Assembly (NCBI GenBank): GCA_963514005.1
Contig: OY740783.1
Coordinates: forward strand, 128,898,001-128,962,000
Source: Raja brachyura
Lineage: Eukaryota
DNA length: 64,000 nt
Direction: 5' to 3'
The notes under the pieces are model-generated. The model was not told where the DNA came from and did not search any database. It saw only the letters and a list, made by a program, of their open reading frames with translations. Made by a program: the position numbers and the translations under genes. Positions 4,796 through 37,617 of this stretch are shown one piece after another; positions within the stretch are counted from its first letter, which is position 1; every line of letters starts with the position of its first letter.

Positions 4796-4915
4796 CGGGT
4801 GCGAACCGCAGCCGGAGCTCACGCTGGGACAGATGGATTAATAGGGGGAGTACGTTGTGAAAGTAACTGTACTCATCCGGTTTGTTGATCACAACCGGAC
4901 ACAGTACTGTTGTCA
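4796..4915 (-). pseudogene. Relic 3' third of an additional V-B exon (CPVVINKPDEYSYFHNVLPLLIHLSQRELRLRFAP)
   Basis: Aligns to the F-G region of V-B. The donor is mutated (g|ataagaaatc vs g|gtaagaaac). The downstream intron (4680-4795) is homologous to those after the other V-B exons. Confidence 0.7.
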
Positions 4916-5142
4916 GATGTTATTCGGGAGAAGGTAGTGGAATGGTGTAAGGATGGAGATATAGATCAGCCAATGGAATAGACTTGATGGGCCGAATGGC
5001 CTGATGATACTGCTATTCCTCAAGACCTTACGAGGCGAGTCTGCGTTCGCTAAGCCCAGAGAGACAGGGTTTCCGGTTCCTGCTCCTCTCCCTCGCTCAC
5101 CACCCTCGCTGTGTACGGCATAATGTGCTGATAGTTTCTTAC

Positions 5143-5544
5143 CAGCTGTGACCCACAGGCGGACCTCACTCTGCGTCAGATGGATAAACGGCGGGTGTAC
5201 TGCGGGGTTATGGGTTGGGGGCCATGCAGGGCGGAAGTAATCCGGTTTCCTGATATCCACCAGACACAGGTAGTCGTCACTATCCTCCCCACTCAGCTGC
5301 TTTATCCTGGTTGAGGCGCTTCCCCGCTTTGGGTTCCCGACCAGCTGGAACCGAGTTGCACCGTTCTCCGCCGTCCAGGATCCATCAGCTTGGGGTCTGA
5401 ACGCGACGATGTGCCGGTAGGGGTCCTTCCTCATCCATGTGACTTTGTGTAGAGTGTGGTCGAATGCAGGCGGTGGGAACACACGGGGTAACGTCCCCTC
5501 AGTCCCCTCAGTCCCAGTCACCACTGAGACATTCACGACAGCAG
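5143..5544 (-). pseudogene. Copy 0 V-set Ig exon B (402 nt, open frame, B-strand Cys replaced by Arg)
   Basis: ttcttcactcag|CT...GCTG|gtaaga, phase 1-1. Reads AAVVNVSVVTGTEGTEGTLPRVF...VTWMRK...RFQLVGNPKRGSASTRIKQLSGEDSDDYLC, with V-set W, RF and DxxxYxC motifs. Confidence 0.85.
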
Positions 5545-5699
5545 CTGAGTGAAGAACATACAGCAGAAAGTAAGTGGGGCCTCGACCCGAAACGTAACCC
5601 ATTCCTTCTTTCCAGAGACGCTGTCTGTCCCGCTGAGTTACTCCATGATTGAAGTCACCCGCAACAATGAAGGCTGCCTCGGGCACCCGATGATCTATA

Positions 5700-6450
5700 A
5701 TTCTTGTTTGCCCTAACCGAGGGGAAAAATATAATATGTATTCACGCTGTCTATTCCTTTCGTGATTTTATACGTTCTAAAAATATCACCCTGTGCTCCC
5801 AGCACTGAAGCCTAGAGCTGTCAAACCTCTTCCTCGAGTTCTGGAACATCCTTATCAATGACTGTATTCTTTCCAGCATATTGGCATATTTCCTGTAGCA
5901 GAGTGACCAAAACTGCGTGGGATACTCCACGTGGGAACTCACCAACATATTATAAAACTGCAACATTACAAACCGACGTCTATATTCAATGTTCCATATT
6001 CTATATTCTAGCTTTACAATACGCATCTCTTCAATACGTTTTTCTCACACCTTTAGCATTTTGGACTCTGGTCTTTGTCCAACCATCATCCTATCTAATA
6101 ACTTGCCTCAACCGTGTCAGCCTATTACGTACCAGGCTTTGTCCTGCCCCTCATCTCTTCCTGCATTCTTTCTCCTCCTCTACAATCAGTCTGATGAAGG
6201 GTTCCGACCCTAAACGTCGTATATCCATGTTATCGTGGGATAGTACATTACCCTTTGAGCTACGGCAGCACTCTGTGTCCTCTTTTGTAAAACAGCATCT
6301 GCAGTTATATTATCTGTATTCAATGCCCTGCCTGTTGAATGCCAGTGAGCCAAAACCATTGTTCATCACAGTGTCTATATTTGACGTCACTTTCGGGGAG
6401 CTATGTATTTGTACTGCAATGTACTTTGTTGTACATCAATCTCCAGGCCC
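5700..6450 (-). mobile_element. Degenerate CR1 RT fragment with a nested Penelope 3' relic (~6035-6310)
   Basis: ORF 5751-6026 (VMLQFYNMLVSSHVEYPTQFWS). The nested piece has a ctgatgaagggttccgaccc hammerhead-like core. Confidence 0.65.
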
Positions 6451-6929
6451 TATTCAATGTGGAAACCTCCCAAACTGCAGAAACTCGCACAAGATCCAGA
6501 AGGTATTCTTGATATGCTTCTGAACTGCGTAGGAATGAACTGCAGTTACTGGTTTACACCGAAGTTACACACACAGAGCTGGAGTAGCTCGGCGAGTCAG
6601 ACAGCATCTCTGGAGAGAAGGAATAGGCGATGTTTTGAGACGAGGCTGAAGGCTAGTCTGAAAAGTCTGACCGGAAACAATAGATAATGTGTGCAGGAGT
6701 AGGCCATTCGGCCCTTCGAGATTGTACCTCCATTCAATGTGATCATGGCTGATCATCCAGAATCGGTTCCCAGTTCCTACCCTCACCCCATATCCCCTGA
6801 CTCTGCTATCTCACCCCTTGAGTCACCTCTTGTGTCCGAAGAAGGGCCTCGACCCAGAACATCATCAATTCCTTTTCTCCAGAGTCGCTGTCTGACCCGC
6901 CGAGTTGCTCCAATGTTTGTGCTTGTCAT

Positions 6930-7545
6930 CCTCCTGCACTGTCTACAATATCACATCTTCTACAGGGGTACCATCGACAGTATGTTGACCTACGGCATCA
7001 CTTCCTGGTTTGGGAACTGCAGGGCTTATGAAGAAAAACAACTTAACAGGATAGTGAAGACAACCAGTAGGATCATCGGTGCTCCACTCCCTTTCCTGTT
7101 GGACACCGATCAGAAGCGTAGCATCCGTAAAGCCATCTCCATTATTAAGGACCCACATCACCCATCACATAACATCTTCTCCATTCTGACATCTGGGAAG
7201 GGGTACAGGAGCATCAGCTGCAAAACCAGCAGGATGCTACACAGCTTCTTCCCACAGGCAATAAGACTGGGTAACGTACTGCGTCCCCTCCCCATACATC
7301 ATACACCGAATCATCTAACCTCGCCCATACTTTGACAGCTGGGCACCTAGGCCGGCTAGGTTCGGTCTGAATGGCTTTATTTTAGTTCAAATTTTTGGCT
7401 TACTTTTAGATATGTAATTTTTTTTAAGTTGTATGTATTTATTCTGTTTTTATTAACTGCACTGGTGGAAACAGATTGCGAAACAATTTTTCTTTTCTTC
7501 TGTGTATGTAAGTATGTAAAATGACATTAAAGTAAATACTGAATA
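6930..7545 (+). mobile_element. Rex1/Babar-type LINE 3' fragment
   Basis: FYRGTIDSMLTYGITSWFGNC...IKDPHHPSH...SFFPQAIRL C-terminal motif, then a 3'UTR ending aatgacattaaag. Confidence 0.8.
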
Positions 7546-8170: not shown

Positions 8171-8448
8171 CTCTTACAGTAAGACATGTTGGAACCACAG
8201 AGTGAAGTTTTCCAATGTTGAGTTCCACACGGCATCAATACATAGCATCGTCGTCTTCCAGGCTCAGTCGCTCCACCATTATCGAGGCATCCCTCTGCCT
8301 GGGGTTCCCCACGAATCTGAACCAACCACTTCCTGTCGCCGGCGTCACTTCTTCGCCGCTGCAGCGGTCAGGACTTAGATATGTACAGTTAAACACAAGG
8401 TGGTCACCCCCTGATTTCCTCCTGTACCACAACACGGAGCCGGTGAGG
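8171..8448 (-). pseudogene. Copy 0 V-set Ig exon A (Siglec-15-like), 5' end truncated by the gap, in-frame stop
   Basis: LTGSVLWYRRKSGGDHLVFNCTY...FRFVGNPRQRDASIMVERLSLEDDDAMY*CRVELNIGKLHSVVPTCLTVR, donor g|gtgagg. TGA at 8235-8237 where paralogs have Arg, probably CpG decay. Confidence 0.85.
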
Positions 8449-8648
8449 NNNNNNNNNNNNNNNNNNNNNNNNNNNNNNNNNNNNNNNNNNNNNNNNNNNN
8501 NNNNNNNNNNNNNNNNNNNNNNNNNNNNNNNNNNNNNNNNNNNNNNNNNNNNNNNNNNNNNNNNNNNNNNNNNNNNNNNNNNNNNNNNNNNNNNNNNNNN
8601 NNNNNNNNNNNNNNNNNNNNNNNNNNNNNNNNNNNNNNNNNNNNNNNN
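8449..8648. other. Assembly gap (200 N)
   Basis: Run of N. Confidence 1.
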
Positions 8649-11600
8649 AACTTAGAAAGCGAGAGGACGAAAAAATGATACATAGAATTAGATCTGAGAA
8701 TGGCAATATATCGACCTTACCAAAAGATATCAATGATATATTTTTACAATATTATCAAAGTCTTTATTCATCAAAAATAACAGGACAAATGGATGAAATG
8801 GATACATTTCTACAAAAATGTAATATTAACAGCTTAGATCAGGGAGGTAGAGACTTGTTAAATGCGGATATATCAATAAAAGATATTGAGGAGTCAATCG
8901 GATCATTAAATAATGGAAAAGCAGCGGGCCCGGATGGCCTGAGTACAGAATTATATAAGAAATTTCAAGATCTGATCTCCCCAAGATTACATGCAGTGTA
9001 TAAATATACATATGAACAAGGAAAATTGCCGGAATCCCTAAATGAATCTACAATTACACTAATTCCTAAGGTTGACAAGGACTTGGAAGACCCAGGATCA
9101 TATAGAGCAATTGCTCTTTTAAATACAGATCAAAAAATTTTAGCTAAAGTTTTATCACGAAGATTAAGTTTGGTGATTACTAAAATAATACACCATGATC
9201 AAACAGGTTTTATCCCAAAGCGTTACTCATCTTATAATTTGAGACGATTATTTAATATCATATATTCAAAAAGAGTTGGGGATAGGGATTTAGCTGTTAT
9301 GTCCTTAGATGCAGAAAAAGCATTCGATCAGGTTGAATGGCCATATTTATTTAGAATAATGGAGAAATTCCAATTGGGGGATAGATTTTGTAAATGGATA
9401 AGAATTCTATATTCGAATCCCACTGCAAGAATATTAACTAACCAAATATTGTCAGCTAAATTTAAGCTTCATAGGGGTTGTAGACAAGGATGTCCGCTGT
9501 CGCCTTTGTTATTCGCTATGGTGATAGAGCCTTTAGCTGAAAGGATTAGATCTGAACCAGAAATATATGGATATAATACTGATACTACAACTAATAAAAT
9601 ATCTTTATATGCAGATGATGTATTAATTTATATTACAAAACCAGAGATCAGTATACCCAAGCTATTTAATGTTATAACTAAATTTGGCAGATTTTCTGGA
9701 TATAGAATTAACTGGAATAAAAGTGAGATTATGCCTATAACCGGAATAAGATCAAATATATTGCAACAATACCCACTAAAAATAGTTACGGATAAATTTA
9801 AATATTTAGGTACTAATGTATCTAAATCCTATAACTCATTAATTAAATCTAATTATCCCCTATTATTAGATAAACTTAGAAAAAATATTTTATACTGGAA
9901 AACACTTCCTATATCTATGATTGGTAGAATAAATGCTATAAAAATGATCTTTTTACCACAACTGCTATACTTGTTTCAAGCTATTCCTTTCTATCTCCCA
10001 AAGAGTTTTTTTAAAAAAAATAGATAACATTGTCAATAGTTTTATTTGGGATTATAAAAATCATAGAATAAGTAAAAAACATTTATGTAAATCAAAAATA
10101 AATGGAGGATTAGCACTTCCAAATTTTTTGTACTATTTTTGGGCAGTCCAGATTAAGAATATGAATTTTTGGTGGGTAAATTTGGATTACGAACCAACGT
10201 GGTTAAAGATGGAAAAGGAAGATTGTTTACCTTTTAATGTAAGTTCAATTCTTTTTGCGCCAAGAGAAATACAAAATAAAATTTATAGGAACAACCCTAT
10301 AATTCATAGCAATAGACGTATTTGGAAACAAATAGTCAAGACTTTATGTTTGGATAATTTGTCACTTAAACTACCAATTATGAATAACCCTTTATTTAAA
10401 CCCTCTATATTAGATAGGGGGTTTAGACAATGGTAGGATTTAGGAATTTATAGGATTGAACATCTGTATAGAAAGGGAAAATTTCTTTTATTTCATGAGT
10501 TACAAGAAATTTATGGGTTACCACCACATAATTTGTTTAGGTATCTACAAATTAGAGATTATATTAAGTCTAACACATAAGATTATAAAATTAAAGAACC
10601 AGGATTATTAGATGAAGTATTTAATAAACATCCAAATTCAGAAAAATTTATAGCTTATATATATAATCTTATTTTGGATAGGGAGAATCCAACAACAGAA
10701 ATATACCGTCAAGCATGGGAAAATGAAATTGGTTTATCTATAACAAAAGAATCTTGGGAAGAAAGTTTACAACGCATACATCGCTGTTCATTAAACGCGA
10801 GGCATACATTGATAGAATTTAAAGTTTTATATAGGTTACATTATTCAAAAACCAAATTAAATAGAATTTTTCCTAATGTCTCTCCTGTTTGTGATAAATG
10901 TCAGAATTTAGAGGCTAATTTAATACATAGTTTTGTAACGTGTTCAAAACTTAGTTATTATTGGACAGAAATCTTTAGAGTTATATCTGAAGTTCTTAGA
11001 GTTAAACTGGATCCAGAACCAAAGTTAATAATATTAGGAATTCCGGATTCACAATGCGTATTAACAGTAAATCAAAGAATTTTCTTAGATTACTGTTTGA
11101 TAATAGGGAAAAAAATAATATTGAAATTTTGGAAGGGAACATTAACCCCCATAATTAAAATGTGGACAGCAGAGATGTTGGAGACTTTGTATTTGGAAAG
11201 AATCAGATTTGTCCTAATGGACAAATGTGAAATCTTTGAACAAATATGGTCTCCATATATACAATATTTGAAGGGCTAGCTGTTCTTGGCATTACTACTC
11301 AATGGGTACTAGACAGGATTTGACGAAAAAAATATGGATTTTCTAATTGGGTTTTGTGTACACGTCTCCGCAATACGACGTTATAATTACAATACATTTT
11401 GTTGTTTCTATCTTAAATATTCATATTATACCATATATTGTTCATAAAGGGGAATTATATATATATACTGAATAGATATATACTAAGTAGTGTTTGTTTT
11501 CTTTTTCTTTTTTTTTTTTTTTTTTTCTTTGACTTTTTATCTTTTTTTATTATTCAAACACAATCATTTTCTTTCTTTTTTTTTCGATTTAAAGTCTATT

Positions 11601-12420: not shown

Positions 12421-13162
12421 TAACTTCTTATAAACACATTGGAGCCGGTCGTGATACCAGGGAGTTAGTTCCGCGGAAGGCGAGCCGGTCCTAAAGCAGG
12501 GCCAAGTCGGAGAACACTCGCAGCCGCGCTGCCGAGCGAGAACAATGGCCGCGTGGGGTCGGGTGGGGTCGGGGGGAGGGGGGGGGGGGTGGCTGAAGGG
12601 CGGGGGTTCCTGCTCTGATTCCTCTCCAGTTAATCCGTCTGGACAGTGCGCTCGTCGACTAGAGGAGACGCCGGCCCTGGTCCACATTCAATTACAGGTG
12701 GATTGTGTAAACCGAGAAATAGGAAGTTGGTGCTCACCTTGTTGGAATTATTCTCCAACTATCAATGGAAACCGAGGCGCCCAGTCGTAAAGGAGGTGTC
12801 GGTGCCCAATCCCCTGTGGGCGGTTCTCCCTCTCGGTGTGGAGTTCACCGCTTCACACATTGAATATTCCCCGTGGAGAACAGTGTTGGGATCCGGGGAG
12901 GCGCGGGTTCGCTGTCGCTCACTCTCTCGCTCTCAGGGCAGCGCCGAGGGAGAGCCGCGCTGTCAGAGGTGCAGAGTGGCCCTGATCTGGAGCCACCCAA
13001 GAATGTGTCCTGTCCCCGGCGCCCTCTGACCCGCCTTCCCTGGGACCATCACCATGAGCTCCACACTGGGCACCGCCTCCACCCACTCCCACAGGGAGAG
13101 GTCGGTACAAGACGTTTCACCCACAGAACGTTGAGACATTCCGGTGTCTATCCTTCCCTCAG

Positions 13163-13557
13163 CTCCCGGCGGGAAGTGGTGACAGGGACGGAGGGGGCTT
13201 CGACCACGTTACCCTGTGTGTATCGATAATCCCAGTATCACCGCACCGCCCTCACGGTCACATGGATGAGGAAGGATCATCACCGACACATCGTCACGTT
13301 GAGACCCCAAGCTGATGGATCCCGGGCGACGGTGAACGGAGCAACTCGGTTCAAGCTGGTCGGGGAGCCAAAGCTCGGAAACGCCTCAACCAGGATAAGG
13401 AAGCTGAGTGTGGAGGACAGTCACGGCTACCTGTGTCTGGTGCAGTTCAGCAAAGAGGAAAACTACGATGCGAGAAAGGACGTCGAACAAAAGTTCAGGA
13501 GCAGCGTACAGCCCCCGTACATCCATCAGTACCAACGTGAGCTGCAGGTCACACCCG
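13163..13557 (+). pseudogene. Copy 1 V-set exon B (7-nt deletion plus TAA stop)
   Basis: ccttccctcag|CT...CCCG|gtaaga; 395 nt vs 402 nt in paralogs (tgtctca missing); LPCVYR* with TAA at 13227-13229; VTWMRK...EDSHGYLC. Confidence 0.88.
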
Positions 13558-14856
13558 GTAAGAAACCATCACCACATTCTGCCGTGTACATCGAAGGTTC
13601 AGATGGAAGGAGGAGAGCAGGACCAGGAAGCCCTGTCTCTCAGGACTCAGTGGGCGCAGCCTCGCATCTGGAGGGTCAGATACAACAGAGAAAAGTCAAA
13701 CATAGTTGATCAATCTATTGGAGTCCTTTGGCGAGGTGAGGAGTTGATTGCCTAAGAGGGAACAAGGTGCTGTGGTACGTTTGGATTCTCAGAAGGATCT
13801 AGGTTGGGTCCCAGCCAGGAGTTTGGGAACCAGATGCGAGAAGGCGGCATTAAGTCAACGCACTGTCGGGGATTGAGAAGCAGTTATCGAGCAGAATGTA
13901 GAATGAAATATCTGGATCTCTGTCACGTTGAGAGTCTGCGTTGCGAGGTACTTCAGAGATTGGTTCTTGGTCTCAACTATTCATAGTCTGCATCAGTGAG
14001 TTGATTGAAGGGGGTGAAATTGTCAGGTCTGATGATGGAGGAAGTGCCTTGGGACTGTGAGAGGGCAGGAGGACACGGAGATTCGGGAAAGGTGGACAAG
14101 TTGAGCGAGTGGGTGGGAGCATAATGTGGAATAAGATGTGGCAAATTATCCACACGGCTGAATAAACATAAATCCAGTGTTTATTAAATTGTGAGTGATC
14201 GGGTAGTGTGGATGATCAAAAGGACCTGAGTGTGCTTGTTCTCATGTCAATAAAGGATGATGTACTGATGTGGAAGAGTCGAGAAGGGCAATAGTTGTTC
14301 AGGTTTTATCAAGAGAGGATTTATATTCAAGGCTTGAGATGTTTCACTGCAGTTATATAAGGATCTAGCGGGACCTCACCTGCAGTACTGTGTCGGACTT
14401 TGCTCTTCTTAACTACAATAAAGCCACGATTAGTGTGGAGCGAGTGTAGTGAAGATTCCGTCACTGTTTCTCGGAAGGGCAGGCTGACTGAAGATCAGGG
14501 GAGATTGAGTAGACCAGAGACCGTGGAGAATGCAGGTATAGGAACATTGAGCAGAAAGAAAGCTACTGGGGGACTCGATAGGCCAGGTAGCATGTCTGGT
14601 AAGAAATTGACGAATGAAAATTCATATCGAGACCTTACCTCAAAACTGGACAAAACGACGTCTTTGGATTTCCTTCTACAGTTGCCTGACTTCCTGTGCG
14701 CTGTCAGCAGGCTGTTATTTGCTCGAGCAGATTAGGCCTGTATTCTCCAGAGTGTAGAGAATGAGAGGTGATCTTAGTGAAGCAAATACCATTTATACAT
14801 TGTCGATGGCTCCCCTTTCCCATTGACCACTCTGACCTCTCTCGCTCTCTCCTCAG

Positions 14857-14956
14857 TAACACAGAATTACATGGGTCTGATCCTGTGCATCCCTCTAGGA
14901 TTGAAAACCGTTTTCCTTTCAGTGATGCGTGTTGTCTTCTACCGTGACAAACTCAG
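14857..14956 (+). pseudogene. Copy 1 transmembrane exon with Lys, (V)TQNYMGLILCIPLGLKTVFLSVMRVVFYRDKL
   Basis: ctctctcctcag| ... cag|gtatgt; 100 nt, phase 1-2; AAA Lys codon at 14904-14906. Confidence 0.82.
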
Positions 14957-15034
14957 GTATGTAATATTGCTTTTCTATGCCTGGAATATAAACTCAATGG
15001 CCTTTGCGGTGTGATTGGAAAAAGTGAGGTTTCC

Positions 15035-15265
15035 TAGACCGCGCCAACCATCGATCATCCATGCACTAGTTCTATCCTGCACTATAGGGGGCGTTTGCAG
15101 AGGACAATTATCCTACAAACCCGCACGTATTTGGGATATGGAGGGACAAAAACCATGCGGTCACGGGGAGCACGTGGAAACTCCGCACAGACAGCACCCG
15201 TAATCAGGATCGAACCCGGGACTCTGCGCTGCAAGGCAGCATCTCTACAACTGCGCCACCGTGGT
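15035..15265 (-). mobile_element. V-SINE (HE1-like); orthologous copy at 40245-40475
   Basis: ggatcgaacccggg...ctgcgccaccgtg is the reverse-complemented tRNA-like head. Confidence 0.75.
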
Positions 15266-15827
15266 ACCCCTGTCGTGTTGGCAATATATGGTTCAGGTGC
15301 ATCATGTACCTACAGATGGAAGAACAGCTTCTTACCCGCTCAGACGATTTGAGAAACCCCTCAAAAGATAAGAATGTATTCCCGATCATCCATTCTACAT
15401 TGATGGAGCCCTTGCCCTCTGCCCTTTCTCTGTAAGCCTATATTCTGCACGGCTTGGCTCTATGGAATAATTTATCTGGATGACACGCGAAACAATGTGT
15501 TTTCCTCGTACCTTTGTCAAGGTGACGATAATAAACCAATACCAATACCTTGCTTCAGGTCAGACAATCCTCCTCACTGTCAACACAACGACCAATATAC
15601 GTGTCCCCTGTTAAGTAAATCACCTGTTTCGCATATTGAAGTCCACCTCAAATTTAGTTGTCAAACGCTGACATTGACAATAACGTCTCCCCTCTGAAGA
15701 ATTTCGTTCAAATCTCCGTCCGAATCACTTCACAGATTTAAATGACGGCTGTGAATGGTGATGCCAGAAATTGTCACGTGGTACAAATTACCGAGGCTTG
15801 TTTTAATTGGTCTTGTTGTGTCCTCAG

Positions 15828-15843
15828 CAAGAATGGTGCCTGA
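15828..15843 (+). pseudogene. Copy 1 terminal coding exon, (S)KNGA*
   Basis: ttgttgtgtcctcag|C AAG AAT GGT GCC TGA; phase 2 matches the TM exon; candidate AATAAA at 16007-16012. Confidence 0.65.
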
Positions 15844-18800
15844 TCCATCCGAGGAAGCTGAGCAGACCAGTGTTCCGACCGCAATGTAACCTGCCTCACA
15901 ATGAAGTCCGCCGATCCCACCTGCTTTTGCGGTCTGGCTGATTTTGTCGACCTTTGGTTGTCAATCATATTAATTCTCCGACTCGCTTTTAATCTGTGTG
16001 TAATATAATAAAATGCAGTACTTCAAGTTCAAAGGAAAGGTTTTGTACACTGAGAGGGTTTGATATCTGGAATATGCTCGGAAACAAAGTGGTGAAAATG
16101 AGATGTACGATAGACGTTTAGACGCATGAACAGGCTCTTAATTAAGAAATAGTTGGAAGGAAAGACAAAGCGTTGCACATTCTCAGTTGGTTAGCAGGGG
16201 ACCGGGCAGGAAGCGTCACCTATCCATGTCCTGCAGAGTTGCTGCCTGATCCGCTGAGTTATTCTAGCACATCGTGTCTGTCTTTGGTAAACACCGGTAT
16301 CAGCAGTTCCCTTTTATTACCAGTTGGAAGGATATGGATCTAATTGGGACCAACTGGATTAATGTGCATAGACAAAGATGGTCATTTTGATATTGTTGGC
16401 CGAAGGGCCAATTTCCTCACTGTACAATTCCATGATTCCAGAAGCACGTCCAAACTTCCCTGCCGTGGCAATCCATGGATCCTGACTAACTTATTTCTTG
16501 TCCCTTTCTTAGTAGTGCTCTGCTTCGTAATCTCAATGCTGGATTTAGCACGCAGGGAACACAAGCTTATTATTAATGCAGTTTGCTTATTTTAAAATAT
16601 TTACAACCTTCCTACAACCTTTATCGAACTTTTGGTTGTCAATCATATTAACATATTAACCTTCGAAGTAAATTTTAATGGAAGTGCGATAAATCGAAAA
16701 TGCTAATTAAATTCACTTATGCAATACACGGAGAACTTAAATTTTGAATTCAGTATGCTTAATTTCGTATATGTACAAGTCTTTAAATATATTTGAATGG
16801 GAGAGCAATATGGAACAACATCTAAAATGGTCATAAAATTCTGCTGTGCTAAAATTATTTGGTTTGCTTTAATTGGAGGTTTACCTTTAATTCAATGACG
16901 TTCTGAATTGCTTGTACCATTTGCAAAGGACCATTCGGCCCATTGGGTCCATGGCCACACCGAGCATTTGACTTATCTCCAGTTCTGTTTCTTTGTTACC
17001 TGTTATCTTGCACAAATCTCAGTCCATCCCCCCACCATTCTTCAGCCAATCACTGTCGCGCTTGATCTCAGTTTTGAGACACAGCATTGAAACTCCGTCG
17101 GTTCAGAGAATCCACGACCATACATCGATCATCCGGGCACACTAGTTCCATTTACTCATCCACTCGCTATACACCAGGTGAAATAGACAAAGGCTAATTG
17201 ATCTACAGACCCGCACGGTCTTTGGATGTGGGTAGAAACCGAGGCACCAGGAGAAAATCCTCCAGCCAGAACAGCACAGACAGGAGCTCAGTTTGACAAG
17301 TTGGTGCTTGCTTTTACAATCAGAGAACATGCAAACAGGCCTTTCGGCCCCAGCCGTTGATGTTGTCCAAGATGCCCCACCTCATTTGGGGTGGGGCATC
17401 TTGGGCCCAATTCCAATGAAACTCAAATCACTAATCCCGTGTAATTCCATTTACCTGTCCCAACCAGACCTTACGCCTTAGAGATAAAGCATGACGCCCG
17501 TACTAATTAGAGTATCCGCCTTAAATATATAAATTGACGGCGATCACCAGCCTTCAATGGTGGATAAACAATAATTCCATAGATTCGTCGCCCTCTAGTA
17601 AAATACATTCATCCTCATCTACTTTCTAGAGGTACGTGGTCTTATTCTGAGGCTACGGCGTCTGGTCCTAGATTCGCCCACTAGTGGAAACATCCTCTCC
17701 ACTCTATTCAGGTCTTTGACTATTCGATCAGTTTTAATTAAGTCCCTGCTCATCCTTCTAAGCTTCCCGTTTCCTATTTCCCCGCTGTTTTCCGATTACT
17801 GAACGATCCTCCCACAAACTAGGTCTTTAGTCACGATTTTACAAGCTAGATAAATGTGGACAAATTCTCGCAATGAAGTCCGCCGATCCCACCTGCTTTT
17901 GCGGTCTGACTAACTTTATCGAACTTTGGTTGTCAACATATTGATTCTCCGACTCGCTTTTAATTTGTTAATGTTACACGTCCGTTTACTAATTTCCCCA
18001 GGTTACAAAGTCAGTTTCAAGGGAGCACGTTGATGTGCCCCCCAGTGGCTTTAAAGCGAGTGAGGGACCTGCGGTCCGGTGAGTTTAAAGGGAGGGTGGG
18101 AACATGAGCTCAGTTTGCCAAGTTGTTGCCTGCTTCTAGAGTATTAGAACTTGCAAAGAGGCCCTTCGGACCCACCCTTTGATGCTGCTCCAGATTCCCC
18201 CTCTAAGATCGACCCATTTGCCTGCGTTTGACCCATGTCGCTCTAAATCATTTCTACCCATCACTCTCAACGTTCCCTTTCTGAGTCCGTGTGTTCCCCC
18301 AAGGAGGTACCGTGAGAATACAGAGCCTCGCTGAGAGATCGAGGGAACCGGTTCCAGGGTTTCTATAATGGGGCACTGAACGTCAGAGACAACTAAATAA
18401 TCACTCCGCAAAAAGACACAACGTTCTGGAGCTGCTAAGCACCTCAGGCAGGCATCTCTGGACGATGTGGATAGCTGACGATTCGGGAATAGCGGAGTGC
18501 ACTCGATTGGCCAATTAACTAATTCCGTTGCTGTGTCTTATAATCTTATGATCGAATACATATATGTCGAAATACCGTTTGGAAGTCATAATTGCATCTG
18601 CTTCCATAGCTTCATTCCAGATGCAGACGAACGTCTGTGAAAATATTGTTCATCGATTCCCTCTTGCATCTCTCCCGTCTCACAAACCTCTGCCCTCTAG
18701 TTGTAAGATAATCTGTCTTGCTAGAAATACTGCGAGCTTTCAGTTTATCCAAGCCCCTGATAGTGTACACCTCAATGAAGTCACCCCTCAGCCTCGTGTA

Positions 18801-19954
18801 CTCCAAAGGAAAATGTCCCAGCCTATCTTACCTCACCCTATAACTGAAGTCTGCAAGCCCATGTAATGACATACTTCCTATAGCTGATAGGCCACAGTAT
18901 TCCGAATGTGGTCTCAACAATGAATTGTAGAACTGAACCATGATATTACAAATTTTGTATTCAATATCATTCTGGGAAAATGTTCTGCACCATTCTCCAT
19001 GGCTCTATCAATTCCCGTCTTGGTTTAACACAATGAAGTGGCCTTTTTTTTTACACTGACAGAGTTTGCAATCTGGAATATGCTATTAAAAAAAAGGAGG
19101 TGAATATTAGATACAAATACTTGCTCGGTAGACGTTTGGACAAACATTTAATGAGGCAAAAGTTGGAAGGTTAGACAAAGTGCTGGAGTTTCTCGGATCA
19201 GGATCCCGACCTGATGCGTCACCAATCCAAGTCCTCCAGAGCTGCTGCCTGACCCGCTGAGTTACTCTACCACGTTGTGTCTATCTTTGGTATTGACCGG
19301 CATCTGCAGTTCCTTCTCTTTACACGTTGGAAGGATATGGATCTAATTCGGACAAACAACATTCATGTACACAGTTTAAAATGTTCACATCCACATGGTG
19401 GGCCGAAGGACCAATTTCTCCACTGCAATTCCCTGACACGTTGACTCCAGAAGCATGTCTAAATCTCCCTGCTGTGGCAACCCCTGGATCGAACTAACTT
19501 CATTGATGTCCTCTTCTTCGCAAACCTCCAATCTGCTTATAAACCTCAAATGATGCATTTAACATACAGGGAACGCAGGGTGCTTAATTTAGAATATTTG
19601 CAACCTTCGAATCAAAATATAATGAATCGAATCTAAAATGCTATTTCAATTCACTTATGCACTACATAGAAAATAATCTGTATTTTTAATGCAGTATACT
19701 TAATTTAGATTATATATTTATGCAAATCTTTAAGTATTTGACTAGAAGGGGTGTATGGAACATAGTGTAAGTTGTTTACTAAATTCAGCGGTACAATGAT
19801 TATTTGGTTTGCTTTAATTGGAGGTGTTATTTTAATTCCATTACTTTTTCAATTGCTTATCACGTTTCCAAAGGGGCTATTTCGCCCATTGGGTCCATGC
19901 ACACACCGAGCATTCGATTCCTCTCCCGTTCGATTCCTTTGATACCTACAACAG

Positions 19955-21185: not shown

Positions 21186-21264
21186 CATGTTAATGCCGGC
21201 CACGAGGAATAGCATCCACTTAGTCCCCTGTGTGGCCTGTCCGTCTCACACTGCATTACTTTGG

Positions 21265-21633
21265 GAGGAAGTGAATAATTCCTGGATCTTTCACTCCCGA
21301 CACTCATTGCAGTGCTTCCCTGTAGTCAAGGTAGGATTCCCTTGGAGGCAAAGTTTGCTGCTGTGCCCTTCATTTCTAATCTGACTTCGCTCTCTGCTCT
21401 GCCTCCTTCTTCCTTTGAGTGATGAATGTCAGTGTTGCAGTTTGGTGTTTGAACATTTTGCAGCAAATTAAGAGAGCAACTTCTGCATTTCAGTGCCAAG
21501 AAAAGAAAATTGCGTGAGACCACCAATTGAGCTGTTGGTGAGGAAGTGACTTTGGGGTTGTCTTTGCACAGTTCTGCTGTCGCTCTCACTGCAGCTTGAC
21601 AGCGTTTGATTCATTCTTTAGATTCACTTCCTC
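21265..21633. promoter_or_regulatory. Cluster of three PU.1/ETS-type GAGGAAGTG boxes, overlapping a relic leader exon
   Basis: Exact 9-mers at 21265(+), 21540(+) and 21625(-). All three are retained in unit 2 at 53056, 53331 and 53416; a further copy is at 23617(-). Confidence 0.45.
21475..21600 (+). pseudogene. Relic 5'UTR/leader exon (LWGCLCTVLLSLSLQ); paralog at 53265-53390
   Basis: gagcaacttctgcatttcagtgccaagaa matches the 5'UTR of the real leader (24437). The translation resembles RVCLCTVLLSVSVH, but there is no ATG or donor. Confidence 0.55.
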
Positions 21634-23454
21634 ACATAAACTGTAAAGTCCAGAAACAATGTTCACAGCCTCAGGGTGAATGGAAACAAACAGACGGGTA
21701 CCCGGGAATGAGATACAGCCTGTATTGCACTCAATGGGATTAATGTGGGCTCAGTGTGAATGGTTGGCTGATGGTTGGTGATGAAACAGGGTTCAACCAA
21801 AAATGTCTGCCTCCAAACAAATGTTGTAAAATATCAGTTCCCGTTGTCCCAACGGGACATGGGGCAGAGGGGTAACAGGTGGATCGCGTTAACAGACAAT
21901 AGACAATAGACAATAGGTGCAGGAGTAGGCCATTTGACCCTTCGAGCCAGCACCGACATTCAATGCGATCATGGCTGATCATCCCCAATCAGTACCCCGT
22001 TCCTGCCTTTACCCCATATCCCCTGGCTCCGCTATTTTTAAATAAACACACCGGGCAACGCAGGGAAATAAAAAAGCAGAACGCACTATATCCCGAATGA
22101 GGGTCGTTCCATACAACACGCATCCTCCGCATAGCACCCGTTAATCCAGTATTGTTGCATGCAATATCGTGCACAGCTTGAGTTGCACCGTTTCACCACA
22201 TCTACACGTCTGGAAGATTGAAATGGTGCAAAGTCCAATCTTCAACGCAAGCCGTCTTCCGTTATGCTGGATTTATACTTGTGCGTCCACGGGGATTGTT
22301 CTTGAGGGAGATTAAGTTCAATGAAACCTGTCTGCCTGATTCATGTAAGTACATCGGACTCCTCAAAAACTTTCTATTCTTCCCCTACTATGACGAAAGT
22401 CTTACTCGCTACCTTCAACGTTCTCCCATAATCAGTCACATCTTCCCATTCCCACCCACTTCCGCTTTCCGTAGAGACCACACTCTCCGCAAATCTTTGG
22501 TTCGTCCAACTCCTGAGGGCCTGTAACATAAAGCCCCACTAATAGTATAGCTAGTGCTGACTGATGACAGCAAGCGTGCCACACGCCTTCTTCGCTACAG
22601 TAGCTAACTATCACCCCAAGAGCACAGTGTCATTGTACCTCAGGATCTGTCTGCTTTGCAGCGCACCACAGATGATGATGTTTCCACTGGTGGTAGAGTC
22701 TAGGACCAGGGGCCATGGCCTCTAAATAACAGGACGCGTCTTTAGAAAGCAGATGAGAATGGATTTATTTAGTCAGAGGTTGTGGAATCAGTGGAATTCA
22801 ATGCCACTGAAAGCTGAGGAGGCTGTGAATTGATATTGTTAAGACAGAGATTGATATTTATCAGTACGGGTGTCAGGGTTATCGGCAAAAGGCAACATAA
22901 TGGGATTGAGAGGGAAAATAGATCAATTGATGTAAATGGATGAGGTGGGGCGGGTGGGGAATGTGGTGACGTACTTTAAGTGCAATGTGACGAATACAAC
23001 CGTATTGTATTGTATTGATATTGTCCATACGTAAGTGTCCTTCAGAAGGTGGTAGTGAGGCGCCTACTTGACCCACCGAGCCCTTAGTGAAGGTTATCTG
23101 GTGACGGCTAAGATGTAAGAAAAGGCGTATGGAGATCGCCATTCATAAAACGAAGTGAGACTCTCGATAAGCAAGAGGAGAAAAGGTGACAGAAAGCAGG
23201 CGGGGATGTGGAGAGAGAATTAACCGCAGAGCAGTCGCGCTGTTATTGACCGGAGGTGCGAGATGAAGGGGCCGACTGGTTTCCAGTAGGGAGAAGATCT
23301 AATGGAGGGATTTGACATTGCGTACAGGGAGGTTGTCCCATTGGTGGACAGAGAAGAGATGACGATAGAGGATGGGGATGATTGGCAAAGGAACCAAGTG
23401 TTTTTCTGGGAACCATTAATGTTAGTTTTGTAGTTTAGCAACTCCTGAACATTC

Positions 23455-23600
23455 TGCAGCAAATGAAAAAAGCAACTTCTGCATTTCAGGGTCTAGAAAT
23501 AAACAGCCGTGAGAGAGGAGCTCACAGCACTGAGGTGCTGGTGGACAAATGTCTGTGGGGTTATCGTTGCTGGGTCCCGATTGCAGGGTAACAACGGGTG
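23455..23600 (+). pseudogene. Second relic 5'UTR/leader cassette
   Basis: Homologous to 21460-21670 (gcaacttctgcatttcag; ctgtggggtt; gattcattcttta..ttcacttcctcac). Deleted in unit 2 (junction ~54652). Confidence 0.45.
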
Positions 23601-24509
23601 ATTCATTCTTTATGTTCACTTCCTCACACAAACTGGAAACCCCAGAAACAGAGTTCACAGCCGCAATATTCTTGGAATCAAAGCGAGATGAGATGAACCC
23701 TTGAATGAGATACAGCCTTTGATGGGTTGAATTGGATGAAGGTGGATTAATGTGAATGGGTCAAATTAATCCTACCTAAGCATACCACACACTTTAGTCG
23801 CCACGCTGACTACCCGTGTCGCCAATTTGTGTATAATATTAACTAGTGTGCCCTTGGGCTCTTTGTTTTACAGCACTCACCAGGGCCCCGTCGTTCACAG
23901 TGTAAGTCATACCCTGGTATTACTTTTTAAAATGCCTGGCCTTGTATTCCTTAGCATATTTTCCCAGTTGATCCAGATGTTCATTAATTTTGTCTGCCAG
24001 TGCTATTACATGTAAACATTCTCTGACGTTCTTTGCATTCCTCGAGGGTCTCTAGGATTGTGGCGATTGGTACTTGTTGGCATAGTGTACACATGTCGGG
24101 TTAGAAGGCCCGTTCCTGCACTACATCGCTCTATGGCGATAATGCTGGGGCACGAACATGCAGATCCGGGATTTTGTGCGAAAACAAAATTGCTGGAAAA
24201 AGATCAGCGGTTCAGGCAACGCTTGTGGATCAAAATGGGCAGACGACGTGTCGGGCCTTGACCTCTTTATTCAGACGCCGTCTGTCAATGTCCCTTCACG
24301 GATACAGCTTAACCCGCTTAGTTCCTCTACGACTTTGGTTTTTGCTCATAACCCTAATCAGCTCAGTATAAAATGATTAATTATCAGTACTTATAGCAGT
24401 TCCTCAAAGCTTTGCCGGAAATGCAGAAATACTTGGAGCAAGTTCTGCATTTCAGCGTCAAGAAGCTCAGAGCAGTGGGTGAGGTGGACTCCACACTGAA
24501 GTGTTGGCG

Positions 24510-24570
24510 ATGCACTCTCACCGGGTTTGTCTCTGCACCGTCCAGCTCTCCGTCGCAGTCCACGGTTGCA
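24510..24570 (+). pseudogene. Copy 2 leader exon MHSHRVCLCTVQLSVAVHGC; donor GT>GG
   Basis: Paralog of 58737-58797; a|ggaggt instead of a|gtaggt. Confidence 0.7.
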
Positions 24571-25050
24571 GGAGGTGTTTTCTGTTGACCTTGTTATCTC
24601 CTCCTTGTATCGTCATATCTCCCCGCGTGCCGGTTCGCACTCCGTCCGCACTCCAGCAGTTTGTACTTTTGCTGAGGTCTGTCAATGGGTGATGTGGGGC
24701 GGGTGGGGACTGCGGTGATATTGTCCATACTGAAGTGTCCTTCAGAAGGTGGTGGTGAGGACGCCTCGTGGCCCACCGTGCCCTTGGTGAAGATTATCTG
24801 GCGACGGCTAAGATGGAGGAAAATGCATATGGAGACCGCCATTCATAAAACAGAGTGAGACTCTCGATCAGCAAGAGGGGAGAAGGTGACAGAGAGCAGA
24901 CGGGGATGTAGAGAGAGAATTAACAGCAGAGCAGCTGTGATGTTATTTTCCGGAGATGCGAGCTGGAGGGGCCGACTGGTTTCCAGCTCTACTAAAGTCG
25001 GGAGGAGATCTGATGGAGGGATTTAACATTGTGTACATGGAGATTGTTCC

Positions 25051-34113: not shown

Positions 34114-34322
34114 TGTAGATTGATGTTCCATGTTAACCAATCACACACCAGCCAGCATCTCTAACTCCACCCCAGTGTAACACTGATACTAATACTATTG
34201 CTCTGCACCAACAATTGGGGCAGCCAGGAGGTGTTGATCACTAACCATCCTTCATGCTGTTAAGTTCTAGTGCTGATTGAAGATGTGTTTGAATGGTATA
34301 CTGAGTCTGGAAGTCATTTACA
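34114..34322 (+). repeat. 3' LTR
   Basis: TG...CA ends, preceded by the PPT (34103-34113) and followed by the TSD. Confidence 0.92.
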
Positions 34323-35197: not shown

Positions 35198-35221
35198 CTC
35201 TCTCTCTCTCTCTCTCTCTCT

Positions 35222-35638
35222 AGCTTCAGGTTCCTGGGAGTCAACCTCTCCGACGACCTCTCTTGGACCCACAATACCTCAACTCTGATCAAGAAGGCTC
35301 ACCAGCGTCTCTTCTTCCTCAGGAGACTGAAGAAGGTCCATCTGTCACCTCAGATCCTGGTGAACTTCTACCGCTGCACCATCGAGAGCATCCTTACCAA
35401 CTGCATCACAGTTTGGTATGGCAACTGCTCTGTCTCCGACCGGAAGGCATTGCAGAGGGTGGTGAAAATTGCCCAACGCATCACCGGTTCCTCGCTCCCC
35501 TCCATTGAGTCTGTCCAAAGCAAGCGTTGTCTGCGGAGGGCGCTCAGCATCGCCAAGGACCTCTCTCACCCCAACCATGGACTGTTTACCCTCCTACCAT
35601 CCGGGAGGCGCTACAGGTCTCTCCGTTGCCGAACCACC
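35222..35638 (+). mobile_element. Rex1/Babar fragment abutting the V-A splice acceptor
   Basis: NFYRCTIESILTNCITVWYGNC...LLPSGRRYRSL; absent at the paralogous site 59300-59338. Confidence 0.85.
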
Positions 35639-35640
35639 AG

Positions 35641-35999
35641 ACGTTTCGCACAATAACTGGACAGTATCCGGTGCGGATGAGGTGTCTGCCGTGTACATTC
35701 ACCTACCCACCCACTGATCGCATCGTCACCGGCTCCGTGCTGTGGTACATCAAGATGCCATCAAGGCCTCCCAGGCTTGGGATAAACTGCACACATGCCG
35801 GTCCCGGCCGCTCCCGATGCGACGAAGTGACACAGAAGGCCGGAGTAGGTCGGTTCAAGTTCGTTGGGTATCTCAGAGGGAGATGCCTCGATAATGGTGG
35901 AGCCACTGAGACGCGAGGACAGGGATAAGTACCGGTGCCGCCTGGAGCTCAGTTTTGGGAAATTTCAGTTTCTGATTCCAACGCAGCTGGCTGTGGAAG
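35641..35999 (+). pseudogene. Copy 2 V-set exon A (Siglec-15-like), two frameshifts
   Basis: 359 nt = 384 - 26 - 2 + 3 relative to copy 3. PCTFTYP, GSVLWY, NCT..RSRC, DKYRCRLE; donor g|gtgaga. Confidence 0.88.
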
Positions 36000-37215
36000 G
36001 TGAGAACAATGCTCAGAAACTGTCGCTGCCCCAGGACTCTCGGACCGCGGGTTCCCCCGGTACAACGCTGATCAATACATGTTGATGGTTCAATTCAATG
36101 ATTCAATTATACTGTATTCTCACACGTACCTATGTAGAGTGAAATACTTTCACTACAGTAAGGGAATCCCAAGAATCCGTCTCCGTCTCCGGTCCTGCAA
36201 ATTGTCCAAACATTCCCCCTCCCCAGAAAGTAAATCAGCAACATTATAAAAAAACTATTGAACCGGGGAACAGACGCGAATCACACACCCATGAACAGTT
36301 GATTATATCCCAGCCTGCAACCCAGAAAAATCATGTAGCAGACCTCATCTTGGCAATACACAACTGTGTCGCCATGTTTTGGCGCCGACAGTTGCTAAGA
36401 TTCACCGCAGTTCTCTCTACTGCCTGCCGCCGCTCGTGGTATCGGCCCACCTTCCTCTCTGCGGTTGCTCCCAGGTCCCTCTTCGTTCTTGCGGTGCGGG
36501 TCCTGTCGTTAGTTCCGCGGAAGGCGAGCCGGTCCTAAAGCAGGGCCAAGCCGGAGAACACTCGCAGCCGCGCTGCTGGGCGAGAACAATCGCCGCGTGG
36601 GGTTGGGTGGGGTGGAGGGGAGGGGAGGGAGGGGGGGGTGGTGGCTGAAGGGCGGGGGTTCCTGCTCTGATTCCTCTCCAGTTAATCCGTCTGGACAGTG
36701 CGCTCGTGGACTAGAGGAGTCGCCGGCCCTGGTCCACATTCAATTACAGGTGGATTGTGTAAGCCGAGAAATAGGAAGTTGGTGATCACCTTGTTGGAAT
36801 TATTCTCCAACTATCAATGGAAACCGAGGCGCCCAGTCGTAAAGGAGGTGTCGGTGCCCAATCCCCTGTGGGCGGTTCTCCCTCTCGGTGTGGAGTTCAC
36901 CGCTTCACACATTGAATATTCCCCGTGGAGAACAGTGTTGGGATCCGGGGAGGCGCGGGTTCGCTGTCGCTCACTCTCTCGCTCTCAGGGCAGCGCCGAG
37001 GGAGAGCCGCGCTGTCAGAGGCGCCGAGTGCCCCCTGATCTGGAGCCACCCTTGAATGTGTCCTGTCCCCTGCGCCCTCTGACCCACCTTCCCTGGGACC
37101 GGCACTGTCAGCTCCACATTGGGCACCGCCTCCACCCACTCCCACAGGGAGAGGTCGGTATAAGACGATTCACCCACAAAACGTTGAGACATTCCGGTGT
37201 CTATCCTTCCCTCAG

Positions 37216-37617
37216 CTCCCGACGGGAATGTCTCAGTGGTGACTGGGACGGAAGGAGCTTCGGCCAAGTTACCCTGTGTGTATCGATAATCCCAGTATCA
37301 CCGCACCGCCCTCACGGTCACATGGATGAGGAAGGATCCTCACCTACACATCGTCACGTTCAGACCCCAAGCTGATGGATCCCGGGCGACGGTGAACGGA
37401 GCAACTCGGTTCAAGCTGGTCGGGGAGCCAAAGCTCGGAAACGCCTCAACCAGGATACGGAAGCTGAGTGTGGAGGACAGTGACGGCTACCTGTGTCTGG
37501 TGCAGTTCAGCAAAGAGGAAAACTACGATGCGAGAAAGGACGTCGAACAAAAGTTCAGGAGCAGCGTACAGCCCCCGTACATCCATCAGTACCAACGTGA
37601 GCTGCAGGTCACACCCG
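37216..37617 (+). pseudogene. Copy 2 V-set exon B (402 nt, TAA stop at 37287-37289)
   Basis: APDGNVSVVTGTEGASAKLPCVYR*SQYHRTALTVTWMRK...EDSDGYLC...ELQVTP; phase 1-1 splice sites intact. Confidence 0.88.

What the first reader, a model, noticed from the sequence alone, without database searches (positions are those of the whole stretch)
4796..37617. Germline-encoded ultralong, hypervariable CDR3-like (F-G) loop in V domain B
Seen: V-B has 34-40 residues between the F-strand Cys and the exon end, versus 20 in V-A. Between conserved anchors (CLV ... V.PP.IH) three barely alignable loops occur: DIRKPDYFRPAWPPTHNPA (copy 0), QFSKEENYDARKDVEQKFRSS (copies 1 and 2) and VINKPDEYSYFHN (relic at 4796-4915). 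The preceding C-to-F framework is 47/62 identical between copies 0 and 2 by manual count. The CDR1-equivalent segment also differs. Each loop lies within one exon, with no RSS. Inference: an innate receptor domain that diversifies a protruding, VNAR/CDR3-like loop by germline duplication rather than V(D)J recombination.
Basis: partly seen in the sequence, partly recalled or inferred. Interest (0 to 1): 0.78.

Follow-up and report, generated by a model that had tools for sequence, protein, structure and literature searches.

The report
Long variable loop in skate Siglec-15-like receptors
The long, differing loops are real, but in this window they sit in dead copies of a skate immune-receptor gene family related to Siglec-15, whose intact members in other rays carry the same kind of enlarged and variable loop.

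Summary
Copies 1 and 2 share an in-frame TAA. Copy 1 also has a 7-nt deletion. Copy 0 has Arg in place of the B-strand Cys, and its partner V-A exon has a TGA. The relic has no splice donor.

The genes belong to a Siglec-15-like family: V-A, V-B and a membrane anchor, in paired activating and inhibitory forms. 128 shark and ray proteins matched. This scan has met the family before on other DNA of this genome. I found no paper on it.

New here:
- The F-G enlargement is confined to rays and skates. Cys to G-strand end is 17-40 residues (median 34) in 56 batoid domains, against 21-26 (median 22) in 47 shark domains.
- It is the most variable part of the domain.
- Loops and frameworks have different histories.

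The parts
5143..5544 (-). V-B exon, copy 0 (402 nt, open frame). The B-strand Cys codon is CGT (Arg) at 5483-5485. The F-G variable core is at 5201-5257.
   Evidence: Pfam V-set E 8e-08. Best intact relative is Amblyraja P0002, 82% over 98 residues.
4779..4904 (-). Relic of the 3' end of a V-B exon, from the F strand to the exon end. It has no 5' part, and the splice donor GGT has become GAT.
   Evidence: Its loop is related to that of copy 0 but is about 16-22 nt shorter.
8171..8447 (-). V-A exon remnant of the same gene as copy 0. It carries an in-frame TGA at 8235-8237, and its 5' part is cut off by the assembly gap.
8449..8648 (.). Assembly gap. It interrupts the V-A exon above. The far side is a reverse-transcriptase ORF at 8651-10024 on the plus strand.
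3347..3451 (-). Transmembrane exon of the copy 0 gene. The family's membrane Lys is replaced by Ser (PLGLS instead of PLGLK).
13163..13557 (+). V-B exon, copy 1 (395 nt). It has a 7-nt deletion near its 5' end and a TAA at 13227-13229. The F-G core is at 13443-13505.
14847..14954 (+). Transmembrane exon of the copy 1 gene. The Lys is kept, but Arg stands where relatives have Cys.
24503..24582 (+). Relic of a signal-peptide exon. The donor GT of the intact copy reads GG here.
35640..35999 (+). V-A exon of the copy 2 gene. It has 26-nt and 2-nt deletions, both of which shift the frame.
37216..37617 (+). V-B exon, copy 2 (402 nt). It has a TAA at 37287-37289. The F-G core is at 37503-37565.
40067..40165 (+). 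Transmembrane exon of the copy 2 gene, with the Lys kept.
58737..58799 (+). Signal-peptide exon of a fourth gene copy.
59338..59722 (+). Intact V-A exon of the fourth copy. It is Siglec-15-like and keeps the F-strand Arg and the extra Cys pair. Its V-B exon lies beyond the window.

Best explanation
The window holds part of a tandem cluster of Siglec-15-like receptor genes of a skate. Each gene has a signal exon, a V-A exon, a V-B exon and a membrane exon.

V-A is a Siglec-15-type lectin domain. V-B is a second Siglec-type V domain that has Leu where Siglec-15 has its sialic-acid-binding Arg.

In rays and skates, V-B gained an insertion at the F-G turn. This is the spot that borders the sugar pocket in Siglec-15. 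The insertion now exists as several old length and sequence types.

The three V-B copies and the relic in this window are pseudogene pieces that preserve two or three of those types.

Shown:
- the gene map and the lesions;
- family membership;
- the restriction of the long loop to batoids;
- the loop being the most variable segment;
- loops and frameworks having different histories.

Inferred:
- The loop types are kept apart by selection while gene conversion evens out the frameworks.
- The loop is a ligand-contact site that gives paired activating and inhibitory receptors different specificities.
For: Gene map and lesions.

Domain identity:
- V-A matches human Siglec-15 (7zoz) at E 1.8e-14.
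- V-B best matches CD276 (4.9e-05) and the Siglec-15 V domain (9.6e-05), with CLV aligned to CRV.
- Both domains are Pfam V-set.

Family:
- 22 of 59 candidates matched.
- 128 of 6134 candidates matched, of which 120 were listed. All are sharks and rays.
- Members have either a membrane Lys with a short tail, or a neutral anchor with a Tyr-motif tail.

F-G length, from the Cys to the end of the G strand:
- batoids: n=56, range 17-40, median 34;
- sharks: n=47, range 21-26, median 22.
The short form is shared with the second V domain of the skate Siglec-15 ortholog.

Variability:
- In 55 unique batoid V-B domains, column entropy is highest in F-G, then in B-C and C'-C''.
- In all 8 batoid genera with 3 or more paralogs, F-G+G identity (0.38-0.64) is below framework identity (0.77-0.92).

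Mosaic history:
- Between copies 0 and 2, framework dS is 0.23 and the following intron is 78% identical. The loop core between them is at chance level, and B-C and F-G are saturated at synonymous sites too.
- The framework tree groups paralogs by genus. Holding the long-type loop carriers together is rejected (delta lnL 27.25, p-AU 0.007).
- Rhinoraja P0010 has a framework 92-97% identical to its four Rhinoraja paralogs, but an F-G region 71% identical to Amblyraja P0006.

Loop composition: rich in Pro, Tyr, Phe, Lys and His.

In human Siglec-15, the F-strand Arg143 and G-strand residues 150-155 hold the sialic acid (passages of PMC10264397).
Against: - No structural model could be made. Exposure, shape and orientation of the loop are therefore unknown.
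- V-B is the domain next to the membrane. Its loop end faces V-A, so the insertion could be a packing or spacing element.
- No coding DNA of homologs could be fetched, so there is no dN/dS and no formal recombination test.
- The group for the AU test was named after the tree had been seen.
- The framework alignment has only 79 columns, and the Rhinoraja clade is not strongly supported (92/83).
- Within Mobula and Hemitrygon most loops share one length class and differ by point changes only.
- The laid contigs gave no sign of expression of the window copies.
- The family's range outside sharks and rays was not searched exhaustively.
Confidence: 0.7

Rival explanations
1. The F-G segment is a weakly constrained spacer or interdomain filler in the membrane-proximal domain. 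Its length and sequence differences are neutral insertions, deletions and drift, not a recognition surface.
For: - The variation is dominated by insertions and deletions.
- The segment is rich in Pro, Lys, Ser and Asp.
- V-A keeps the lectin Arg in most members and is the obvious ligand-binding domain.
- There is no selection test and no structure.
Against: - Loop types are conserved between genera. The P0010 and P0006 F-G regions are 71% identical, and the window's copy 0 type recurs in sawfish (20 of 37 residues).
- Distinct types persist beside frameworks that are 92-97% identical within a species.
- The aromatics Tyr, Phe and His make up about 24% of the insert, against about 8.5% of the framework.
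- B-C and C'-C'', which lie at the same end of a V domain, vary as well.
Confidence: 0.2
2. The loop differences in this window are simply decay of dead genes and say nothing about function.
For: - All copies are broken.
- Copies 1 and 2 break 2-3 of the 11 invariant batoid columns.
- Framework dN/dS between copies 0 and 2 is 0.69.
Against: - Both loop types occur in intact annotated genes of other skates and rays.
- Copies 1 and 2 have identical loops despite 10 differences in 375 nt.
- Decay cannot bring a 60-nt core to chance level when the sequence on both sides is about 80% identical.
Confidence: 0.05
3. V-B is a rearranging or somatically diversified antigen-receptor-type V segment.
For: Only the resemblance in loop position and the aromatic-rich loop content.
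Against: - The G strand and splice donor lie in the same exon as the loop.
- There is no RSS.
- The closest solved relatives are Siglec-15 and B7-family V domains.
- The same loop sequences are present in the germline annotation of several species.
Confidence: 0.02

Closest known systems
Siglec-15 (human structure 7ZOZ; skate ortholog P0116)
   Same: - V-A shares the LPCTFTHP motif, the extra Cys pair, the F-strand Arg and the RF.F/LVGN motif.
- The membrane Lys that binds DAP12 in Siglec-15 is present in most family members.
- V-A plus V-B align colinearly with the first two V domains of the skate Siglec-15 ortholog.
   Different: - There is no C2-set domain.
- V-B has Leu instead of the Arg and lacks the extra Cys pair.
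- Batoid V-B has the F-G insertion.
- The family is multigene, with inhibitory-tailed members as well.
Rapidly evolving paired Siglec and PILR-type receptors of mammals (recalled, not tested here)
   Same: Clustered genes, activating and inhibitory partners, members that have lost the lectin Arg, and frequent pseudogenes.
   Different: Those families vary mainly in the N-terminal lectin domain. Here the enlarged variable loop is in the second, Arg-less V domain.
Germline-diversified V-domain innate receptors such as the NITRs of bony fish (passage in PMC3031540; the rest recalled)
   Same: A non-rearranging V domain, multigene clusters, variation concentrated in CDR-like loops, and activating and inhibitory forms.
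   Different: No specific sequence relationship was found; Pfam gives only the general V-set family. The variable domain here descends from a Siglec lectin domain.
Skate MDIR receptors (passage in PMC3031540)
   Same: A skate multigene family of activating and inhibitory Ig-type receptors.
   Different: MDIRs are described as CD300/TREM/pIgR-like. Here the best solved match for V-A is Siglec-15, and pIgR matches V-B only at E 0.0035-0.005. No MDIR sequence was available for a direct comparison.
Shark VNAR and cattle ultralong CDR H3 (recalled)
   Same: A long loop between strands F and G of a V domain.
   Different: Those loops are made by V(D)J joining and somatic change, on the outermost domain. 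This loop is germline, about 10-18 residues longer than the shark form, and sits on the membrane-proximal domain.

Membership tests
Siglec-15 (orthologous gene) | N-terminal V-set domain with the F-strand Arg (human R143) that binds sialic acid | tested here: met
   V-A reads C-R in the copies at 59338-59722, 35640-35999 and 8171-8447 and aligns to human C-R-V-E-F. V-B reads C-L-V, so it does not meet this feature. The role of R143 is taken from passages of PMC10264397.
Siglec-15 (orthologous gene) | Second disulfide in the V domain (human C95-C104) | tested here: met
   V-A has the matching Cys pair, aligned. V-B has neither Cys.
Siglec-15 (orthologous gene) | One V-set domain followed by a C2-set domain | tested here: not met
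   The second domain is V-set, and the membrane exon follows it directly. The skate gene that does keep a C2 domain is a different one, P0116, at 30-33% identity.
Siglec-15 (orthologous gene) | Lys in the membrane helix for DAP12 pairing | tested here: met
   PLGLK is present in the membrane exons at 14847-14954 and 40067-40165 and in most relatives. It is replaced by Ser at 3347-3451. The role of the Lys is taken from passages of PMC6941304. Actual pairing is not testable here.
Rearranging antigen-receptor V segments (Ig, TCR, VNAR) | RSS after the V exon, with the G strand supplied by a separate J segment | tested here: not met
   There are 0 RSS-pattern matches in the window, and no strict heptamer at or after the three exon ends. 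The G strand and splice donor lie in the same exon.
Paired activating/inhibitory multigene innate receptors with germline V diversity | A tandem gene cluster with both charged-anchor and inhibitory-tail forms | tested here: met
   Four gene copies lie in the window. Relatives have either a Lys anchor with a short tail, or a neutral anchor with a tail carrying VIYAAV-type motifs. The ITIM consensus is recalled.
Paired activating/inhibitory multigene innate receptors with germline V diversity | Variation concentrated in the CDR-equivalent loops | tested here: met
   Column entropy in 55 batoid V-B domains. Within-genus identities of framework against B-C and F-G.
Functional gene (as opposed to pseudogene), for the window's V-B copies | Open frame, canonical Cys pair, intact partner exons and splice sites | tested here: not met
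   TAA in copies 1 and 2; a 7-nt deletion in copy 1; Cys to Arg in copy 0; TGA or frameshifts in the partner V-A exons; relic without a donor. The laid contigs list no other letter at 37287-37289, but 290 rows were hidden and paralogs cross-map.
Skate MDIR family | CD300/TREM/pIgR-type Ig domains | not testable with these tools
   Only a description was available, and no MDIR sequence could be fetched. The best solved relatives here are Siglec-15 and CD276.

The most novel reading that the evidence does not exclude
In rays and skates, a lectin-derived V domain that lost its sugar-binding Arg has been turned into a germline recognition module. Its B-C and F-G loops behave as old, exchangeable cassettes that are kept diverse by selection, while gene conversion homogenises the frameworks around them. 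This would give paired activating and inhibitory receptors a combinatorial, non-rearranging repertoire.
Probability: 0.3. Interest if true: 0.7.

Novelty: new variant of a known kind. Interest (0 to 1): 0.45.

Why it matters
Cartilaginous fishes are the oldest lineage with antibody-type immunity, and their non-rearranging V-domain receptors are poorly described. This family shows a Siglec-type lectin domain being duplicated, losing its sugar-binding residue and, in one lineage only, growing a variable loop beside the former sugar pocket. If the loop binds ligands, it is a natural example of germline diversification of a CDR3-like loop on a lectin scaffold. It would also offer a testable system for how paired receptors keep binding-site diversity in the face of gene conversion. 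For this window alone the result is more modest: a decaying part of the cluster that has preserved two or three loop types.

Tried and rejected
- Frameshift or inversion as the source of the loop difference. The other frames and the reverse complement of the two loop cores show no relation, so I rejected this.
- RSS. None was found.
- Structure prediction of the ectodomain of P0006 with a 70-row alignment (A2). The ESM Atlas holds a model of P0006 (mean pLDDT 0.69). Its V-B part aligns over 106-114 of about 136 residues to ordinary V-set models. That leaves room for an extra segment but does not locate it.
- Coding DNA of homologs for dN/dS and recombination tests. The only codon comparison possible was between the window's own copies.
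- Reads. Only short assembled contigs of four runs were available, and their kind (DNA or RNA) is not on record. Paralogs cross-map at 90% likeness. No alternative letter is listed at the copy 2 TAA, but 290 rows were not shown. No V-A to V-B or V-B to membrane-exon joints appeared. This neither proves the stop nor shows silence.
- Literature. No paper in the searchable library describes this family or its loop. I saw search listings and abstracts only, except for passages of PMC8455134, PMC13738210, PMC3031540, PMC10264397 and PMC6941304. The gene-family tables of the whale-shark paper might list these genes.
- The large all-protein HMMER search was not run, so the family's absence outside sharks and rays is not established.
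- The species could not be named. The best protein identities are 82-83% to Amblyraja radiata.

Full report
**What is in the window.** tblastn with relatives and direct reading give four gene copies of one type. Each has a signal exon, a V-A exon, a V-B exon and a membrane exon.
- Gene 0, minus strand: V-A 8447..8171, V-B 5544..5143, a V-B relic at 4904..4779, and a membrane exon at 3451..3347.
- Gene 1, plus strand: V-B 13163..13557 and a membrane exon at 14847..14954. No V-A exon was found.
- Gene 2, plus strand: V-A 35640..35999, V-B 37216..37617 and a membrane exon at 40067..40165.
- Gene 3, plus strand: signal exon 58737..58799 and V-A 59338..59722. Its V-B exon lies beyond the window.

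Genes 1 and 2 lie in a segmental duplication, roughly 12.4-25 kb against 36.5-55 kb, at 83-94% identity. Retrotransposon ORFs fill much of the rest of the window.

**The assembly gap.** The gap at 8449-8648 starts inside the V-A exon of gene 0; the reading frame begins at the gap's edge. On the other side lies an AT-rich reverse-transcriptase ORF on the opposite strand. No minus-strand frame there encodes the missing 111 nt or so of the exon. The two sides are therefore not a continuous exon. No V-B exon is touched.

**The observation.**
- Forty residues follow the F-strand Cys in copies 0, 1 and 2. By my own counts on tool output, 34 follow it in the relic and 20 in V-A.
- The framework from VTW to the Cys is 45 of 60 identical between copies 0 and 2.
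- The loop cores (57 and 63 nt) are no more alike than shuffled sequence. The local score is 8 against 6.4 +/- 1.1, and 80 of 500 shuffles reach 8. They are unrelated in other frames and on the other strand.
- No RSS is present.

Every copy is broken.
- Copies 1 and 2 share a TAA in the B-C loop.
- Copy 1 also lacks 7 nt.
- Copy 0 has CGT (Arg) for the B-strand Cys.
- Gene 0's V-A has a TGA, and its membrane exon has Ser for the family's Lys.
- Gene 2's V-A has 26-nt and 2-nt deletions. A signal-exon relic near 24.5 kb has lost its donor.
- The V-B relic's donor GGT is now GAT.
- Copies 1 and 2 break 2-3 of the 11 columns that are invariant in 55 intact batoid V-B domains. Copy 0 breaks none of those, but it breaks 3 of 18 near-invariant columns. 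Intact rows break 0.45 of those on average and 2 at most.

Contigs of four public runs list no other letter at the copy 2 TAA. However, 290 rows were hidden, paralogs cross-map, and the runs are contigs of unknown kind. This is weak support only, and it says nothing about expression.

**What the genes are.**
- Both domains are Pfam V-set.
- V-A matches human Siglec-15 at E 1.8e-14, including the extra Cys pair and the F-strand Arg.
- V-B matches CD276 at 4.9e-05 and the same Siglec-15 V domain at 9.6e-05, with C-L-V opposite C-R-V.
- A word-index search with the copy 0 V-B exon found 22 ray and skate proteins among 59 candidates.
- A search with their alignment found 128 shark and ray proteins among 6134 candidates, of which 120 were listed. 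They carry automatic names such as 'uncharacterized', 'Siglec-15', 'pIgR-like' and 'JAM-like'.
- Their layout is signal, V-A, V-B, then one of two endings. One is a Lys-bearing anchor with a short tail. The other is a neutral anchor with a long Tyr-motif tail.
- Some sharks have (V-A, V-B) twice, or V-A plus three V-B. Some rays have V-B twice.
- The skate's true Siglec-15 ortholog (P0116) is V-V-C2-anchor, and a shark V-A/V-B pair aligns colinearly with its two V domains.

The family is thus a Siglec-15 offshoot without the C2 domain. By the passages I read, R143 and the membrane Lys are the functional hallmarks of Siglec-15. V-A and most anchors keep them; V-B does not keep the Arg.

No protein in the collection is identical to the window's exons. 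The best identities are 82-83%, to Amblyraja radiata, so the species is an unannotated skate.

**Where the variable segment lies.** A skate member (P0006) and a horn-shark member (P0047) align end to end at 51% identity. The one large gap is 18 residues between the F strand and the conserved G-strand motif. The shark's short F-G region aligns without gaps to the second V domain of P0116. That domain aligns through the G strand of human Siglec-15 into its C2 domain. The membrane exon follows V-B directly. The G strand therefore comes after the variable segment, which is an F-G insertion and not a stalk. This rests on alignment; no model could be made.

How the domains were chosen:
- I built an HMM of V-B from the first alignment and found 231 domain hits in the 120 listed proteins.
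- I kept hits of 100 bits or more that started by profile position 5. I dropped 6 whose G strand my pattern did not find (one domain of P0028, and P0002, P0100, P0070, P0078 and P0112). That left 103 domains.

Length, from the Cys to the end of the G strand:
- 56 batoid domains in 8 genera: 17-40 residues, median 34.
- 47 shark domains in 9 genera: 21-26 residues, median 22.

The short state is shared with the Siglec-15 second V domain, so the long state is derived and specific to batoids.

Variability:
- In 55 unique batoid domains the framework columns are nearly fixed. Entropy peaks in F-G, then in B-C and C'-C''.
- In each of the 8 batoid genera with 3 or more paralogs, mean F-G+G identity (0.38-0.64) lies below framework identity (0.77-0.92). 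One row, P0029_1, was skipped by the script.
- The insert is enriched in Pro, Tyr, Phe, Lys and His.

Against a picture of continuous hypervariability, though, the loops fall into a few types. Within Mobula and Hemitrygon most paralogs share one length class.

**Different histories of loop and framework.**

Between copies 0 and 2:
- Framework dS is 0.23 and dN/dS is 0.69.
- The intron just after the exon is 78% identical.
- B-C and F-G are saturated at synonymous sites as well (pS 0.82 and 0.60).
- The loop core is at chance level.

Point substitution from a common ancestor of that age cannot give this pattern. Segments of different age sit side by side.

Across species:
- A tree of loop-masked frameworks (28 rows, 79 columns) groups paralogs by genus: Rhinoraja 5 of 5 with support 92/83, and Pristis 4 of 4 with 99/97.
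- Loop types, in contrast, cross genera.
- Forcing the seven carriers of the long type into one clade costs 27.25 log-likelihood units (p-AU 0.007). I named that group after seeing the tree, which weakens the test.
- Rhinoraja P0010 is 92-97% identical in framework to its four Rhinoraja paralogs. Its F-G region is 71% identical to Amblyraja P0006 and only 29-50% identical to those paralogs.

Both of the window's loop types recur in intact genes elsewhere. Copies 1 and 2 match P0006 in 23 of 38 residues. Copy 0 matches sawfish P0079 in 20 of 37, and Amblyraja P0002 over the part that P0002 has. The simplest reading is that gene conversion or exchange homogenises the frameworks, or moves the loops, while the loop types persist.

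**How it most likely works.** This part is inferred. In human Siglec-15 the sugar is held by the F-strand Arg and by backbone groups of the G strand (passages of PMC10264397). V-B lost that Arg, and in batoids it grew an insertion exactly at the turn between those two strands. I think the most likely role is a protein- or glycan-contact loop that sets or tunes ligand specificity among the paired activating and inhibitory receptors. The persistence of distinct types would then reflect selection. I put this at about one in three. The main rival is a loosely constrained spacer in the membrane-proximal domain.

**Novelty.** Five literature searches found no description of the family or of its loop. 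Supplements were closed. Follow-up notes of this scan had already recognised the family on other DNA of the same genome and also found no paper. One unchecked first-reader note just past this window's end mentions the same loop pattern. The following appear to be new here: the batoid restriction, the family-wide variability figures, the loop and framework discordance, and the pseudogene status of this window's copies.

**Verdict.** This is a new variant of a known kind of receptor. Interest is moderate, because the window copies are dead and the key structural and selection tests could not be run.

Noticed in passing
window 12464-25000 and 36508-55000: Segmental duplication carrying genes 1 and 2, in pieces at 79-94% identity and broken up by repeats. 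The shared TAA shows that the V-B exon was already dead when the segment was copied.
   Followed up: partly
window 8651-10024 (+), 56332-56730 (-), 62128-62460 (-), 62817-63164 (-): Non-LTR retrotransposon ORFs: reverse transcriptase (twice), an endonuclease, and a GDSL/esterase-type ORF. One of them abuts the assembly gap inside the gene 0 V-A exon.
   Followed up: partly
V-B domains of P0001-P0120 (window copies: 5143-5544, 13163-13557, 37216-37617): The C and C' strands of V-B (the stretch beginning VTWMRK) are almost invariant in 103 domains from 17 shark and ray genera, and more conserved than V-A. This suggests a fixed contact face, such as a dimer or a V-A/V-B packing surface. It remains unexplained.
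   Followed up: no
proteins P0024-P0027, P0026, P0029, P0037, P0041, P0001: Other domain layouts occur in the family: (V-A, V-B) twice in bamboo and epaulette sharks, V-A plus three V-B in Heptranchias, and two V-B in a row in Hemitrygon and Mobula.
   Followed up: no
protein P0116 (Leucoraja) and P0117, P0119, P0120: The proteins annotated as true Siglec-15 in skates, sawfish and sharks have two V domains before the C2 domain. The human protein has one.
   Followed up: partly
V-A of P0003, P0004, P0007, P0019, P0022: Several intact family members have lost the sialic-acid-binding Arg in V-A (Gly, Gln, Ser or Asn in its place), as happens in some mammalian Siglecs.
   Followed up: no
protein P0005 (Leucoraja): The G strand of V-B appears to be partly duplicated (a repeated QLQV/QLRV unit), which adds four residues before the anchor.
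   Followed up: no
window 24503-24582: A relic of a signal-peptide exon lies about 11 kb upstream of the gene 2 V-A exon. Its splice donor is lost.
   Followed up: partly
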